From the sequence record MN871440.1: a stretch of DNA of 64,000 nucleotides. One strand, written 5' to 3'. Position numbers and translations under genes: made by a program. Position 1 is the stretch's first letter. Every line of letters starts with the position of its first letter. Positions 7,418-11,229 of this stretch are shown here, piece by piece. The notes beneath the pieces were generated by a model, which searched no databases, was not told where the DNA came from, and saw only the letters and a list, made by a program, of their open reading frames with translations.

Positions 7418-8548
7418 ATGGATACCGTATTTAATAAAAATGTAGTTGATCATATGAAAGCTCCGTTGTTCTTGGGCGAAGCAATGGGATTAGCCAGATA
7501 TGAAACAGTAAAACACCCAGCGATTGACAAATTAACGGAACGTTCTCTATCATTTTTCTGGCGTCCCGAAGAAGTGGATTTGTCCAAAGATGCAATCGAC
7601 TACAATCAACTGAGTGAAGCCGAACAGCATGTTTTCACCCAGAATCTGAAATATCAAAGTCTGCTTGACTCCGTGCAGGGTCGCGCACCTAACTTGGTAT
7701 TCTTGCCAATCGTGTCCGATGTCGCGCTTGAGACTTGGATCACTACTTGGAGTTTTAGTGAGACAATTCATAGCCGTTCTTATACTCACATCATGCGGAA
7801 TATCTATGTTGATCCGTCTGCTGTGTTTGATAAGATTCTGCTTGACAGTAAGATCATGGCACGTGCCACTTCTGTAACTCAGTATTACGATAATCTGATC
7901 AAAGAGTTGAAAACATACGATCTGGTATCACAGCCCGTATTCTCTCCGGAGTTGCGAATTGCACAACTGACCAAGGTCAAAGAAGCGTTGTATCTTGCAA
8001 TGCACGCCGTAAACGCTTTGGAAGCAATTCGTTTTTATGTTAGCTTTGCTTGCACCTTCTCGTTCGCTGAACGTGGTATCATGGAAGGCAATGCTAAGAT
8101 CATGCGTCTGATTGCGCGGGATGAACAGCTTCATCTGAAAGGCACCCAGTATCTGATCCGTGCTTGGCAGAATGCAGAAGATGATTCCGAAATGTATGAG
8201 ATTGCTAAACGTCTCGAACACAAAGCGGTACAAATCTTCTTGGAAGTTGCCGAACAAGAGAAAGACTGGGCAAGAGACTTGCTGGGTAATGTTACTCTTC
8301 CTGGCCTGAGTCTATCTAGCATGTTGGATTACATCGATTATCTGACTGTAAGCCGTATGCGCTCTGCTGGTCTTCCTGCACCGGAAGAACTGAATACCAG
8401 CATGAAACACCCTCTTCCGTGGATTCGCAAGTGGCTGAATAGTGATTCCGTTCAAGTCGCTGCTCAAGAGGCTGAGTTGTCTAGCTATCTGATCGGACAA
8501 GTTGATTCAACTCTCGATGATAGTTTCTTTGAAGAACTAGAAGTTTAA
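7418..8548 (+). CDS. nrdB: Class Ia ribonucleotide reductase small subunit, no intron
   Basis: FFWRPEE, LDSVQ, ETIHSRSY, EAIRF, DEQLH di-iron motifs. Confidence 0.97.
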   Translation: MDTVFNKNVVDHMKAPLFLGEAMGLARYETVKHPAIDKLTERSLSFFWRPEEVDLSKDAIDYNQLSEAEQHVFTQNLKYQSLLDSVQGRAPNLVFLPIVSDVALETWITTWSFSETIHSRSYTHIMRNIYVDPSAVFDKILLDSKIMARATSVTQYYDNLIKELKTYDLVSQPVFSPELRIAQLTKVKEALYLAMHAVNALEAIRFYVSFACTFSFAERGIMEGNAKIMRLIARDEQLHLKGTQYLIRAWQNAEDDSEMYEIAKRLEHKAVQIFLEVAEQEKDWARDLLGNVTLPGLSLSSMLDYIDYLTVSRMRSAGLPAPEELNTSMKHPLPWIRKWLNSDSVQVAAQEAELSSYLIGQVDSTLDDSFFEELEV

Positions 8549-8551
8549 CAG

Positions 8552-8579
8552 AATCCGCCTTCGGGCGGATTTTTTATTT
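8552..8579 (+). terminator. Rho-independent terminator
   Basis: aatccgcc-ttcg-ggcggatt plus T run. Confidence 0.9.
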
Positions 8580-8645
8580 CCAAAATGTGTTGACACTTGG
8601 TATCGTTCTGATAATATGGACACATCTAAACGAGAGGAACAAATC

Positions 8646-8909
8646 ATGAAATACCAAATTCGAGTTTTTAAGAACGAACAAACTAAGCAAGCTTATGTTG
8701 CTGCAAACAGAGAGGCTATGGCGTCAGAAAACAAAGATTTCGCGCACCGTATGTTTGGTATGGTGTTCTATGATATGAACACATCTGAATTTGACTCTGA
8801 TATCATGAACATAGAAGCAAAGAGCAAGTTCGGTGCTTTCTGTGCTGCTCGTTCGATTGTTCGTAAACAAGGTTTTAAACTCATTACTCAATGTGAGGAT
8901 CTGAAATGA
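8646..8909 (+). CDS. Hypothetical protein (87 aa)
   Basis: GAGGA RBS, ATG 8646, downstream of TTGACA/GATAAT promoter near 8590-8615. Confidence 0.7.
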   Translation: MKYQIRVFKNEQTKQAYVAANREAMASENKDFAHRMFGMVFYDMNTSEFDSDIMNIEAKSKFGAFCAARSIVRKQGFKLITQCEDLK

Positions 8910-8992
8910 AAGGCTTTACTCTGATCGAATTGATTGTTGTTGTTGCAATCCTGGGAATTCTTTTCAGCGTTGTTGCTCCAACAATTTTCTAA
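8906..8992 (+). CDS. 28-aa prepilin-like peptide MKGFTLIELIVVVAILGILFSVVAPTIF
   Basis: Read by hand: GAGGA RBS 8895-8899, ATGA overlap with upstream stop; class III signal G|FTLIE with pilin F1, E5, G14, P22. Confidence 0.8.
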   Translation: MKGFTLIELIVVVAILGILFSVVAPTIF

Positions 8993-9061
8993 AAAGAAGA
9001 TACCGAGTTACTTTCTTTGTTCGGCTAAGTTTATTACCGACATAAATAGTATTACTATAAG

Positions 9062-9089
9062 AACGAGTCGAGAGACTCGTTTTTCTTTT
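9062..9089 (+). terminator. Hairpin with T tract in nrdD leader
   Basis: aacgagtc-gaga-gactcgtt followed by ttttcttt. Confidence 0.6.
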
Positions 9090-9114
9090 CCTACACACTC
9101 ACAACGGAAACAAA

Positions 9115-11229
9115 ATGCAAGTACAAAAACGCGACGGTCGAATCGTTGATTTTGATCGTTCTTTTATTGAAACAGCAATCTCTAATTCTCTGCAATCTAT
9201 CGGCATCACCGATCCCACCTTCCCACACCACGCTACCGAAGCTGTTGTTCGCAAACTCGCTGGACGCTCTAAGGTAACGATTGAAGAAATTCAACACGTA
9301 GTTGAAGACACCTTAATGAAATCACGCTATCCTGCTGTGGCTCGCGCCTATATCGAATATCGATATGATCGTGACGTTGCTCGTGACTTGAATTCAGACA
9401 TGACTAAACGAATCATGGGACTGATGAAGCAGGAAGACGAATCAATCATGAACGAAAACGCCAACAAAGACGCTAAGGTAATCCCAACTCAACGTGATTT
9501 GGTAGCTGGTATCGTTAGCAAGCACTTTGCAAAACATTATCTCCCTTCTAATGTAATACAAGCGCATGAAAACGGCTGGATTCACTTCCACGATCTTGAT
9601 TATTCTCCGTTCTTCCCGTCATTCAACTGTATGCTGATTGATGTTGAAGGGATGTTAACTCGTGGATTCAGAATGGGTAATGCTCAGATTGAAACTCCGA
9701 AAAGCATTTCTACCGCTGCTGCTGTAGTCGCTCAGATTATCGCACAAGTAGCAAGTCACATTTATGGCGGCAACACGATTAATCGCATTGACGAAGTGTT
9801 GGCACCGTATGTTAGAATGACACATGAAAAGCATTTGGATGAAGCGCGTTACTGGAAGATTCCAGATCAACAGCAATATGCTATTGAAAAGACTCGCAAA
9901 GCTGTGTATGATGCTATGCAAGGACTTGAATACGAAGTGAATACCCTTCACTCCGCAAACGGACAAACTCCGTTCTGTACCTTCGGATTTGGTCTTGGTA
10001 CTAGCTGGGAGTCAGAACTGATTCAAGAAGCAATCTTGAAAGTGCGTCTGAAAGGTCTTGGTAAGAAAGGCATCACTGCCGTTTTCCCGAAACTTGTATT
10101 CGCTCTGAAAGACGGACACAACTTGAAGCAAGGTGATCCACTGTATCGTATCAAACAGTTGGCTCTGGAATGCGCGTCAAAACGTATGTATCCGGATATT
10201 CTGAGTTATGATAAAGTAGTTGAAACCACCGGCTCATTTAAGTTCCCAATGGGATGCCGTAGTTTCTTGCATCGCTGGGAAGATGAAAACGGTAATGAAG
10301 TTCACGAAGGTCGAAATAACCTCGGCGTTGTGACTCTGAATCTGCCACGTATCGCTCTTGATGCAAATCAAAATCATATGCGTTTCTGGGAACTTCTGGA
10401 AGAGCGTATGGAAGTAGTCAAGAAAGCTTTAATGGTACGTGTTGATCGTCTGCGCGGAGTTAAGGCAAGCGTTGCTCCTATTCTCTACGTTGAAGGCGCT
10501 TGTGGTGTACGTCTGAATCCAGATGATGACATTATGAAAGCGTTTGAAAACGGTCGTGCTTCTGTTAGTATTGGTTATATCGGTCTGCATGAAGTCACCG
10601 AAATCATGATGTCTAACATTGATGAACACATCATGGAGAATCAATCCAAGCAAGTATTCGCCGTTTCTGTTCTTCAACGAATGAAAGAAATCGCGGATGC
10701 ATGGAAAGCACAAACTGGACTCGCATTCAGTCTGTACGGTACTCCATCCGAAAGTCTGTGCTATCGTTTTGCAAGAATTGACCGCGAACGTTATCCAGAT
10801 CACAAGATCTTTGATAAAGATTATTACACAAACAGTTTCCATCTATCCGTTGATCATAATACAAATCCGTATGACAAGATCGACTTTGAGAAACAGTTTA
10901 TCCCGTTCAGTACCGGTGGATTTATTTCATACGGTGAATATCCGAACATGAAAAATAATCTGGAAGCACTTGAGCAAGTTTGGGATTATGCTTATCTGAA
11001 TACTCCCTACTATGGCACCAATACTCCAGTTGATTCATGTTTCGAATGTGGATTCCACGGTGAATTTACCGCGACTTCTAAAGGATACGAATGTCCTAAG
11101 TGTGGTAATCATGACGGCAAAAAGATGAATGTTATTCGTCGTGTTTGTGGTTATTTGGGTGAAGTTAACGCTCGTCCATTTAACAAAGGCAAACAACAAG
11201 AAGTTATTCGTCGCGTGAAACACATGTAA
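9115..11229 (+). CDS. nrdD: Class III anaerobic ribonucleotide reductase, with ATP cone, no intron
   Basis: VQKRDGR ATP cone, IHFHDLDY, MGCRSFL, NLGVVTLNL, CxxC..CxxC, RRVCGYL glycyl radical loop. Confidence 0.97.
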   Translation: MQVQKRDGRIVDFDRSFIETAISNSLQSIGITDPTFPHHATEAVVRKLAGRSKVTIEEIQHVVEDTLMKSRYPAVARAYIEYRYDRDVARDLNSDMTKRIMGLMKQEDESIMNENANKDAKVIPTQRDLVAGIVSKHFAKHYLPSNVIQAHENGWIHFHDLDYSPFFPSFNCMLIDVEGMLTRGFRMGNAQIETPKSISTAAAVVAQIIAQVASHIYGGNTINRIDEVLAPYVRMTHEKHLDEARYWKIPDQQQYAIEKTRKAVYDAMQGLEYEVNTLHSANGQTPFCTFGFGLGTSWESELIQEAILKVRLKGLGKKGITAVFPKLVFALKDGHNLKQGDPLYRIKQLALECASKRMYPDILSYDKVVETTGSFKFPMGCRSFLHRWEDENGNEVHEGRNNLGVVTLNLPRIALDANQNHMRFWELLEERMEVVKKALMVRVDRLRGVKASVAPILYVEGACGVRLNPDDDIMKAFENGRASVSIGYIGLHEVTEIMMSNIDEHIMENQSKQVFAVSVLQRMKEIADAWKAQTGLAFSLYGTPSESLCYRFARIDRERYPDHKIFDKDYYTNSFHLSVDHNTNPYDKIDFEKQFIPFSTGGFISYGEYPNMKNNLEALEQVWDYAYLNTPYYGTNTPVDSCFECGFHGEFTATSKGYECPKCGNHDGKKMNVIRRVCGYLGEVNARPFNKGKQQEVIRRVKHM

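What the first reader, a model, noticed from the sequence alone, without database searches (positions are those of the whole stretch)
8906..8992. Hidden 28-aa gene that is only a type IV pilin N-terminal helix
Seen: below the ORF-track cutoff, with GAGGA RBS and ATGA coupling to the upstream early gene, MK-G|FTLIELIVVVAILGILFSVVAPTIF. Numbered from the prepilin-peptidase site it has F1, E5, G14 and P22, the conserved positions of type IVa pilins and T2SS pseudopilins. No globular domain follows in any frame. Known: these residues drive processing, methylation and polymerisation in pili and pseudopili. Inference: a headless pilin decoy that saturates prepilin peptidase or poisons T4P/MSHA/T2SS assembly, excluding pilus-dependent competitor phages or shutting down secretion. 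Alternatively the motif is borrowed simply to insert a peptide in the inner membrane.
Basis: partly seen in the sequence, partly recalled or inferred. Interest (0 to 1): 0.85.

Follow-up and report, generated by a model that had tools for sequence, protein, structure and literature searches.

The report
Phage micro-gene encoding a headless pilin
A real, conserved 28-codon early gene of an Aeromonas T4-like phage encodes only the signal peptide and membrane helix of a type IV pilin, with no head domain; it most likely jams the host's pilus or secretion machinery, but this has never been tested.

Summary
Window 8906-8992 (+) encodes MKGFTLIELIVVVAILGILFSVVAPTIF. It has a GAGGA ribosome-binding site and an ATGA overlap with the upstream gene, and a terminator follows. 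The peptide passes the curated cut-offs of both prepilin N-terminal models (Pfam N_methyl 32.9 vs 21.2 bits; TIGR02532 35.8 vs 16.3).

The window is Aeromonas phage AsFcp_1. The same 27-29-codon gene sits between nrdB and nrdD in seven T4-like Aeromonas phages of three genera. Synonymous changes far outnumber replacements (10 vs 3). G-1, F1, E5, G14, the proline and the stop position are all fixed. Its conservation (67-96%) is closer to that of nrdB/nrdD (82-96%) than to the co-transcribed orf87 (37-44%). It is therefore neither a truncation nor a remnant.

It is the short extreme of a wider, uncharacterised set of phage "mini-pilins" of 34-82 aa in Aeromonas, Vibrio, Pseudomonas and Delftia phages and in metagenomic phage contigs.

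The gene is not hidden. Annotators of Aeh1 and PX29 already noted the pilin-like N-terminus, but I found no functional study.

The decoy or poison mechanism is plausible. Truncated and synthetic pilin helices are active in Caulobacter, and small phage membrane peptides inhibit pili in Pseudomonas. It remains unproven here.

The parts
8550..8573 (+). Intrinsic-terminator-like hairpin ending the nrdB transcript
   Evidence: 10-pair stem, 5 GC pairs, T-run. nrdB is the ORF 7418-8548.
8590..8617 (+). Sigma-70-type (T4-early-like) promoter match for the two-gene unit
   Evidence: TTGACA-16 nt-TAATAT, 10/12 matches, TG before the -10. In PX29 the same 5' leader (atggacacatc...) runs straight into the mini-pilin gene.
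8646..8909 (+). orf87, an 87-aa soluble protein of unknown function; its stop overlaps the mini-pilin start (ATGA)
   Evidence: No Pfam hit. phrog_23306, unknown function. AF2 pLDDT 85.5, alpha/beta fold, no significant PDB match. Only 37-44% identical between genera. Absent in PX29.
8895..8899 (+). GAGGA ribosome-binding site, 6 nt before the ATG
   Evidence: Conserved in all seven phages, with 6-7 nt spacing to the MKG start.
8906..8992 (+). Mini-pilin gene: leader MKG (8906-8914), 25-residue alpha1N helix (8915-8989), TAA stop (8990-8992)
   Evidence: Orthologues of 27-29 aa in Ah1, Aeh1, avDM12, phiAS5, phiWae14 and PX29. 10 synonymous vs 3 conservative replacement codons against phiAS5.
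9059..9084 (+). Intrinsic-terminator-like hairpin closing the unit, before nrdD (9115-11229)
   Evidence: 11-pair stem followed by a T-run. nrdD ORF.

Best explanation
The ORF is a genuine, early-expressed phage micro-gene. Its whole product is a class III (prepilin) signal peptide: a 3-residue leader (MKG) plus the 25-residue hydrophobic alpha1N helix of a type IV pilin or pseudopilin, with no alpha1C and no globular head.

Shown here: the gene exists, it is conserved as a short gene in three phage genera, it is under purifying selection, and it keeps G-1, F1, E5, G14 and the proline at position 21 or 22.

Inferred: the peptide inserts N-in into the inner membrane. It is too short for co-translational SRP targeting, so insertion would be post-translational. 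The host prepilin peptidase (TapD/PilD class) then cleaves it after Gly and N-methylates it. The product sits in the membrane as a pilin stem that can dock wherever a pilin stem docks: the peptidase, the platform protein, the PilN/O or GspL/M partners, or the base of a growing filament through the E5-to-N-terminus contact. It offers nothing to clamp, extract or stack.

The expected net effect is competitive jamming of type IV filament machines (Tap and MSHA pili and/or the Exe type II secretion pseudopilus) within minutes of infection. This would remove pilus receptors used by competing phages and shut down pilus-dependent functions of the infected cell.
For: - Motif above curated cut-offs: N_methyl 32.9/21.2 bits, TIGR02532 35.8/16.3 bits. 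The best full-family models are GspG, GspH and PilA, matched over their first ~27 positions only.
- Seven syntenic orthologues of 27-29 aa were found by DNA similarity, not by motif. M, K, G-1, F1, T2, L3, I4, E5, L6, G14, the proline and the last Phe are invariant.
- Codon differences in the first 19 codons: 10 synonymous vs 3 conservative replacements (AsFcp_1 vs phiAS5), 5 vs 2 (vs PX29), 3 vs 0 (vs Aeh1).
- Identity of 96/70/67/75% to Aeh1/phiAS5/phiWae14/PX29. This compares with 82-96% for nrdB/nrdD and 37-44% for the co-transcribed orf87.
- The gene is kept while the surrounding nrdB-nrdD gap gains and loses genes.
- Early-type promoter and strong RBS.
- Similar head-less genes occur in unrelated phages: T5-like Aeromonas phage AhP_Mru1 (37 aa, same MKG leader), PhiW-14 (44 aa), PAK_P3-like (59 aa), KVP40-like (61-82 aa), and complete 34-50-aa genes inside metagenomic phage-like contigs.
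- tblastn hits among 50,697 phage records fall in phages of Synechococcus, Pseudomonas, Vibrio, Aeromonas, Acinetobacter, Delftia and Microcystis. No Escherichia, Salmonella or Klebsiella appears in the organism counts.
- In bacterial genomes the shortest genuine motif-bearing ORF among 105 was 88 aa. Full-length bacterial pilins with the same MKG leader exist.
- Precedents: Caulobacter PilA cut down to 17 or 25 mature residues still signals from the membrane. A synthetic 17-mer lowers susceptibility to the pilus-specific phage CbK by 77% and attachment by 71% (PMC7196804). Pf4 PfsE suppresses twitching and excludes pilus-dependent phages by binding PilC (PMC8764522). Virus-encoded pilins are handled by host machinery in a haloarchaeon (PMC12426801). 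The 'drill-chuck' model of pilin extraction clamps the helix just below the head, which this peptide lacks (PMC10191384).
Against: - There is no experimental evidence of translation, processing or any phenotype for this or any phage mini-pilin. Nine literature searches that ran found no paper on them.
- A 28-residue product is finished before it leaves the ribosome. The SRP/Sec route used by true prepilins (PMC10191384) cannot apply, so topology and peptidase access are assumptions.
- The leader is at the short extreme.
- I do not know these phages' receptors. KVP40 is reported, from my own knowledge, to use an outer-membrane protein. The benefit to a fast lytic phage is therefore conjectural.
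- I could not compare the peptide with the Aeromonas TapA, MshA and ExeG stems, so the target system is unidentified.
- Conservation of G-1/F1/E5 would also be expected if only processing mattered, and not interference.
Confidence: 0.45

Rival explanations
1. Generic small membrane peptide. The prepilin signal is borrowed only to place, and perhaps trim, a single-span helix in the inner membrane. There it acts on an unrelated target such as a transporter, a sensor, membrane potential or another phage's DNA entry, in the way the T4 Imm and Sp proteins or the YIP peptide do.
For: - Very high hydrophobicity: GRAVY 2.5 for the mature part.
- The C-terminal half varies between genera (VVAPTIF, ILPKIF, VSIPALFH).
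- Other lytic phages use ~32-aa transmembrane peptides against non-pilus membrane targets. YIP, for example, binds the YfiN transmembrane region (PMC8085984).
- The Vibrio, Pseudomonas and metagenomic relatives carry unrelated hydrophilic tails.
Against: - A plain anchor has no need for an invariant Gly-Phe cleavage site, a buried Glu at position 5, Gly14 and the proline. All of these are fixed in orthologues that were found by synteny.
- The motif is absent from the hits in phages of enterobacteria, despite their abundance in the collection.
Confidence: 0.2
2. Signal mimic rather than mechanical poison. The peptide imitates a full inner-membrane pool of retracted pilin. It acts on a sensor that reads the pilin stem (PilS-type kinase, PleC-type kinase or Chp-type receptor), reprogramming pilin expression or cyclic-nucleotide signalling in the infected cell.
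For: - In Caulobacter the first 17 mature residues of PilA suffice to activate PleC through its first transmembrane helix. The peptide alone alters c-di-GMP, pili and phage susceptibility (PMC7196804).
- P. aeruginosa PilS is reported to sense PilA by intramembrane contact (Kilmury and Burrows 2016, cited in PMC6058289). I could not read the paper itself.
Against: - Transcriptional outputs are slow relative to a T4-type lytic cycle. Such phages generally shut off host transcription (general knowledge).
- No sensor of this type was examined in Aeromonas.
Confidence: 0.15
3. Lysis-related membrane peptide: a holin, antiholin or other lysis-timing factor that happens to carry a prepilin-like helix.
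For: One metagenomic 50-aa relative overlaps the end of a cell-wall hydrolase gene (PF07486) and lies near a Peptidase_M23 gene (L180).
Against: - In AsFcp_1 and all six relatives the gene sits behind an early-type promoter among nucleotide-metabolism genes, not in a lysis cassette.
- The other metagenomic relatives are not next to lysins.
Confidence: 0.07
4. No function: either a decaying fragment of a captured host pilin gene, or the first piece of a longer protein made by frameshift or read-through.
For: - The N-terminal motif is so widespread that capture from a host is easy.
- The DNA is 83.6% identical over 60 nt to the KVP40-group gene.
- The gene is not annotated in Ah1 or phiAS5.
Against: - The length is conserved within one or two codons in three genera. 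Synonymous changes far outnumber replacements, and the RBS is conserved. Conservation is far above that of the neighbouring gene.
- The downstream sequence differs between relatives: a terminator here, a promoter there. No shared extension exists in any frame.
Confidence: 0.05

Closest known systems
Aeh1ORF040c (Aeh1p044) and PX29p038, the annotated orthologues in Aeromonas phages Aeh1 and PX29
   Same: Same gene at the same locus. Aeh1's copy is 96% identical and PX29's 75%. The depositors noted 'similar to N-terminal sequence of bacterial secretion protein pilin' and 'similar to N-terminal part of fimbrial protein (pilin)'.
   Different: Nothing essential differs. They are hypothetical proteins with no assigned function. 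PX29's annotated start (MKMKG) is probably 2 codons too long.
Other phage 'mini-pilins': KVP40.0030 / phrog_13280 (61-82 aa), PAK_P3 gp139 / phrog_10597 (59 aa), PhiW-14 gp120 (44 aa), AhP_Mru1 CDS0313 (37 aa)
   Same: Phage-encoded. Where tested, the only Pfam hit is N_methyl. The GFTLIE core is the same, they lack a pilin head, they sit in early or small-gene regions, and their function is unknown.
   Different: They carry 10-55 extra periplasmic residues and lie at other loci (next to td in the Vibrio phages). The AsFcp_1 type stops exactly at the end of the membrane helix and belongs to no PHROG of its own.
Geobacter PilA-N (geopilin domain 1, 61 mature residues)
   Same: It is the best match among solved structures over residues 1-25 (E 3e-5). 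To my knowledge it is also the shortest natural type IVa pilin.
   Different: PilA-N keeps the whole alpha1 helix (N and C halves) and, from my own knowledge, polymerises with a partner, PilA-C. The phage peptide has only alpha1N and is less than half as long.
Caulobacter CIP peptide (PilA residues 1-17, experimental truncation and synthetic peptide)
   Same: A head-less pilin stem that is biologically active in the membrane. It reduces pilus function and susceptibility to a pilus-specific phage (PMC7196804).
   Different: It is a laboratory construct from a Tad/Flp-type pilin and acts through the kinase PleC. It is not phage-encoded and no natural gene for it is known.
PfsE of Pf4, and YIP of PB1-like phages: tiny phage membrane peptides
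   Same: Small phage peptides that suppress twitching. PfsE binds the platform protein PilC and excludes pilus-dependent phages (PMC8764522). YIP is about 3.6 kDa with a predicted transmembrane helix (PMC8085984).
   Different: I did not compare sequences. Neither paper describes a prepilin cleavage motif. PfsE comes from a temperate filamentous phage. YIP acts through the diguanylate cyclase YfiN.
Virus-encoded full-length pilins: SNJ2 PilA1/2, cyanophage 'pilin' phrog_3433, LESphi3/F10 213-aa protein
   Same: Viral genes with a class III signal peptide. For SNJ2 the pilins are shown to be assembled by host machinery (PMC12426801).
   Different: They have globular domains and, in the case of SNJ2, build filaments. 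The AsFcp_1 peptide cannot build a filament surface.

Membership tests
Class III signal peptide / prepilin-type N-terminal cleavage-methylation domain (PF07963, TIGR02532, IPR012902) | HMM score above the curated cut-off | tested here: met
   PF07963 32.9 bits vs 21.2; TIGR02532 35.8 bits vs 16.3.
Class III signal peptide / prepilin-type N-terminal cleavage-methylation domain | Short hydrophilic leader ending in Gly or Ala, then 20-25 mainly hydrophobic residues, often with Glu at position 5 (definition in PMC10191384) | tested here: met
   Leader MKG. The 25 residues FTLIELIVVVAILGILFSVVAPTIF include E5. The leader is at the short extreme but occurs in four full-length bacterial pilins.
Class III signal peptide / prepilin-type N-terminal cleavage-methylation domain | Cleavage after Gly and N-methylation by a prepilin peptidase | not testable with these tools
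   Needs mass spectrometry in wild-type and peptidase-deletion hosts.
Type IV pilin / pseudopilin (structural subunit of a type IV filament) | 'Lollipop' architecture: alpha1C plus a globular head after alpha1N | tested here: not met
   The ORF stops at mature residue 25. The stop position is conserved in seven phages and is followed by a terminator or a promoter. It is therefore not filed as a pilin subunit.
Type IV pilin / pseudopilin (structural subunit of a type IV filament) | Polymerises into a filament through the host machinery | not testable with these tools
Without a head it could at most enter the helix core.
GspG major pseudopilin (TIGR01710 equivalog) | Whole-protein score above 88.85 bits over the 134-position model | tested here: not met
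   30.9 bits, covering model positions 1-27 only.
KVP40-type phage mini-pilin (phrog_13280) | Match over the whole 67-position profile, including the conserved tail (...YEIDGQLMQCTPV...) | tested here: not met
   Only profile positions 4-30 match (37.6 bits), whereas VH7D matches 1-67 at 156.7 bits.
Phage superinfection-exclusion inhibitors of type IV pili (PfsE, Aqs1, Tip, Zip) | Binds a pilus-machine component and abolishes twitching and plating of pilus-dependent phages | not testable with these tools
   This family is defined by function, not by sequence. The precedents are in PMC8764522 and PMC13436744.

The most novel reading that the evidence does not exclude
Virulent phages of bacteria that make type IV pili (Aeromonas, Vibrio, Pseudomonas, Delftia and uncultured hosts) carry a family of genes that encode bare or nearly bare pilin stems. 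The 25-residue Aeromonas version is the minimal natural pilin. After processing by the host's own prepilin peptidase, it would act as a non-extractable plug or chain terminator in the platform or filament base. That would switch off type IV pili and/or type II secretion early in infection. This would be a new mechanistic class of phage-encoded inhibitor, working by substrate mimicry, and a natural peptide template for anti-pilus and anti-secretion compounds.
Probability: 0.35. Interest if true: 0.8.

Novelty: new variant of a known kind. Interest (0 to 1): 0.6.

Why it matters
If the peptide is processed and interferes with filament assembly, it would be the smallest natural substrate of a prepilin peptidase. 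It would also be a natural experiment showing what the first 25 residues of a pilin can do alone. That bears directly on an open question: how the platform protein grips and extracts pilins.

It would add substrate mimicry to the known phage strategies against pili, which so far target PilB, PilC or PilZ with unrelated proteins. The N-terminal helix is nearly universal, so such a peptide could act across pili, MSHA, competence pili and type II secretion. This matters for anti-virulence design and for phage-phage competition in aquaculture pathogens.

Even if the mechanism proves to be different, about 30-codon genes like this fall under common gene-caller length limits. This one is unannotated in Ah1 and phiAS5. 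The case argues for motif-aware calling of micro-genes in phage genomes.

Tried and rejected
I used exact-sequence look-up and the 31-aa PX29 form against 1.84 billion representatives instead. That search gave 3341 hits at E<=0.001. Many short hits there are contig-end fragments (P0047 and P0053, for example, are one gene cut twice). I used only those verified as complete internal genes.
- The bacterial genome scan returned pilins from many phyla and no Aeromonas, because the search patterns were narrow. The planned comparison with host TapA, MshA and ExeG stems could not be done.
- orf87 gave no lead. It has no Pfam hit, an unknown PHROG, and a confident AF2 model (pLDDT 85.5) without any significant PDB match (best E 1.2 to a GIY-YIG domain, TM 0.46).
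- The Rfam scan of 8400-9300 found only sub-threshold chance matches. There are no tRNAs in the window.
- Structure prediction of the peptide itself was not possible (30-aa minimum). No multimer modelling is available.
- The Kilmury and Burrows 2016 paper on PilS is not held.
- Rejected readings: truncation, pseudogene, frameshift extension, and upstream regulatory ORF. Nothing lies downstream in the operon here, and a promoter follows the stop in relatives.

Full report
**Identity of the window.** The region is 100% identical, at the same coordinates, to Aeromonas phage AsFcp_1 (MN871440.1). This is a T4-like phage of A. salmonicida, close to Ah1 and Aeh1 (Straboviridae, Cinqassovirus).

**The observation.** The ORF at 8906-8992 (+) reads MKGFTLIELIVVVAILGILFSVVAPTIF.
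- GAGGA lies at 8895-8899, 6 nt before the ATG.
- The ATG overlaps the TGA of an upstream 87-codon ORF at 8646-8909.
- The two genes form a compact unit: nrdB (7418-8548), terminator (8550-8573), sigma-70/T4-early-type promoter (8590-8617, TTGACA-16-TAATAT with TG), orf87, the small ORF, terminator (9059-9084), nrdD (9115-).
- The peptide exceeds the curated thresholds of Pfam N_methyl (32.9 vs 21.2 bits, E 4e-8) and TIGR02532 (35.8 vs 16.3 bits).
- With 929 ORFs of at least 20 codons in the window, about 4e-5 such hits are expected by chance. It is the only one.
- Nothing coding follows in any frame. Rfam and tRNA scans found nothing.

**It is a real gene, and short on purpose.** DNA search found the same locus in Ah1, AsFcp_2/4, Aeh1, avDM12-TAAL, phiAS5, phiWae14 and PX29, which span three genera.
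- Each carries a 27-29-codon ORF with the same MKG leader, the same GAGGA 6-7 nt upstream, and a stop one to three codons after a conserved Pro-x-(I/L)-Phe.
- In five relatives a promoter-like GTTGAC follows the stop within a few bases. Ah1 shares this window's terminator-bearing downstream sequence, and in PX29 the next gene follows directly. No common extension is possible.
- In PX29 the upstream orf87 is missing, and the small gene sits directly behind the shared 5' leader.
- Codon comparison over the first 19 codons gives 10 synonymous vs 3 conservative replacement differences (AsFcp_1 vs phiAS5), 5 vs 2 (vs PX29) and 3 vs 0 (vs Aeh1).
- Amino-acid identity to AsFcp_1 is 96/70/67/75% (Aeh1/phiAS5/phiWae14/PX29). 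The flanking nrdB and nrdD segments are 82-96% identical, and the co-transcribed orf87 only 37-44%.
- The nrdB-nrdD gap itself is plastic. Two extra genes are present in Aeh1, phiAS5, phiWae14, avDM12 and PX29, and none here. The small gene is always kept.

**How unusual is the length?**
- Among the best 80 IMG/VR loci encoding the motif, only the three Aeromonas phage genomes have a 25-26-residue mature part. The others range from 67 to about 380 residues, mostly DUF1559 proteins.
- Among 105 motif-bearing ORFs in 80 bacterial loci, the shortest genuine one is 88 residues.
- The nearest solved structures are Geobacter PilA-N (61 mature residues), a PilA and an MshA, all aligned over residues 1-25 only.

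**It is the extreme of a wider phage phenomenon.** tblastn over 50,697 phage records found 163 records. They fall in phages of Synechococcus, Pseudomonas, Vibrio, Aeromonas, Acinetobacter, Delftia and Microcystis, with no enterobacterial genus in the organism counts.

| Phage or group | Length (aa) | Note |
|---|---|---|
| AhP_Mru1 (T5-like, Aeromonas) | 37 | same MKG leader, followed by a hairpin and T-run |
| PhiW-14 | 44 | |
| PAK_P3 / KPP10 group | 59 | |
| KVP40 group | 61-82 | next to td |
| Acibel004 | 107 | |
| Cyanophage 'pilin' | 127 | |
| LESphi3 / F10 | 213 | tail-module gene |

- The four tested short forms (37, 44, 59 and 66 aa) hit only N_methyl in Pfam.
- Six PHROGs share the N-terminus, and five of them are of unknown function.
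- A search of 1.84 billion representative proteins gave many short hits. Four that I checked (34, 45, 47 and 50 aa) are complete genes inside phage-like contigs.

**What is already known.** The Aeh1 and PX29 annotators recorded the resemblance to a pilin N-terminus, and UniRef names the proteins automatically. Nine literature searches that ran found no study of any phage mini-pilin, and a 2025 review of mobile elements versus competence pili mentions none.

**Mechanism.**

*Shown:* the product is a bare class III signal peptide as defined in PMC10191384. The positions that are fixed under selection are G-1, F1, E5, G14 and the proline. By established knowledge of pilins, these govern cleavage (G-1), methylation and docking (F1, E5) and melting of the helix (G14, P22).

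*Inferred:*
- The single Lys orients the N-terminus to the cytoplasm.
- The peptide is too short for SRP, so it enters the membrane after translation.
- The host peptidase trims and methylates it.
- The 25-mer then competes with host pilins and pseudopilins for the peptidase, the platform or the filament base.
- It cannot be clamped below a head, as the drill-chuck model requires (PMC10191384), and it cannot contribute a surface. It therefore blocks or destabilises assembly.

*Published precedents that make this credible:*
- Caulobacter PilA truncated to 17 or 25 mature residues is active in the membrane. A synthetic 17-mer reduces CbK susceptibility by 77% (PMC7196804).
- PfsE of Pf4 blocks pili through PilC (PMC8764522).
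- YIP, about 3.6 kDa, reduces twitching through YfiN (PMC8085984).
- Viral pilins are accepted by host machinery in an archaeon (PMC12426801).

I put 0.45 on interference with type IV filament machines. The rivals are a generic membrane peptide with another target (0.20), a pilin-pool signal mimic (0.15), a lysis-related role (0.07, suggested only by one metagenomic neighbour), and no function or an extension product (0.05).

**Weak points.** There are no expression or processing data. The insertion route and topology are assumed. The leader is very short, although four full-length bacterial pilins share it. The benefit for a lytic phage is unknown.

**Verdict.** The gene is a new variant of a known kind, namely the minimal member of an unstudied set of phage-encoded head-less pilins. 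Annotators have already seen it but it has never been examined. Interest is 0.6.

Noticed in passing
window 8646-8909: orf87, translationally coupled to the mini-pilin, folds confidently (AF2 pLDDT 85.5, beta-beta-alpha-beta-alpha). It has no Pfam family and no significant PDB match. It evolves much faster (37-44% identity between genera) than its 28-codon partner. Only its last 12 residues, which overlie the mini-pilin RBS, are well conserved.
   Followed up: partly
L174 1201-1314 (Aeromonas phage AhP_Mru1, T5-like): An unrelated Aeromonas phage carries a 37-aa N_methyl-only gene with the same MKG leader (MKGFTLIELIVVIAIVAILVSIVLPMFTGGAVLTPRP). A 30-aa hydrophobic ORF precedes it, and a GC-rich hairpin with a T-run (terminator-like, read by eye) follows.
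   Followed up: partly
L179 4001-4105 and 1474-1578 (JGI metagenome contig): A complete 34-aa N_methyl-only gene lies beside a phrog_1383 virion structural protein and an ATPase. The 7-kb contig is a mirror-image inverted duplication, probably an assembly artefact.
   Followed up: partly
L180 3001-3153: A 50-aa N_methyl-only gene overlaps the end of a Hydrolase_2 (PF07486) cell-wall hydrolase gene, near Peptidase_M23 and DNA ligase genes. This is the only case hinting at a lysis-module position.
   Followed up: no
L018-L093 (IMG/VR): Dozens of viral contigs, up to 171 kb, encode full-length DUF1559 (PF07596) proteins with a prepilin N-terminus and a mature part of about 300-320 aa. Their role in viruses is unclear, or the contigs are misassigned.
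   Followed up: partly
L006 997-1092 (PX29): The annotated start MKMKG puts the ATG 1 nt after GAGGA. The second ATG, at 7 nt spacing, gives the same MKG leader as all the orthologues, so the annotated start is probably wrong.
   Followed up: yes
L003 (avDM12-TAAL): The record is filed under Chrysonvirus, but its orf87 is 99% identical to that of AsFcp_1 and its mini-pilin is identical to that of Aeh1 (Cinqassovirus). This points to either mosaicism or misclassification.
   Followed up: no
L012 1267-1725 (AhFM11): A pilin-like gene is annotated as 152 aa with the cleavage motif at residue 79. A start at MKLKERKSKRTVPGVKAN-G would give a long type-IVb-like leader and a 74-residue mature part.
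   Followed up: no
L178 1486-2127 (LESphi3; also F10): A 213-aa prepilin-type protein is encoded inside the tail gene module of temperate Pseudomonas phages, between the gene annotated as major tail sheath protein and the tail assembly gene.
   Followed up: no
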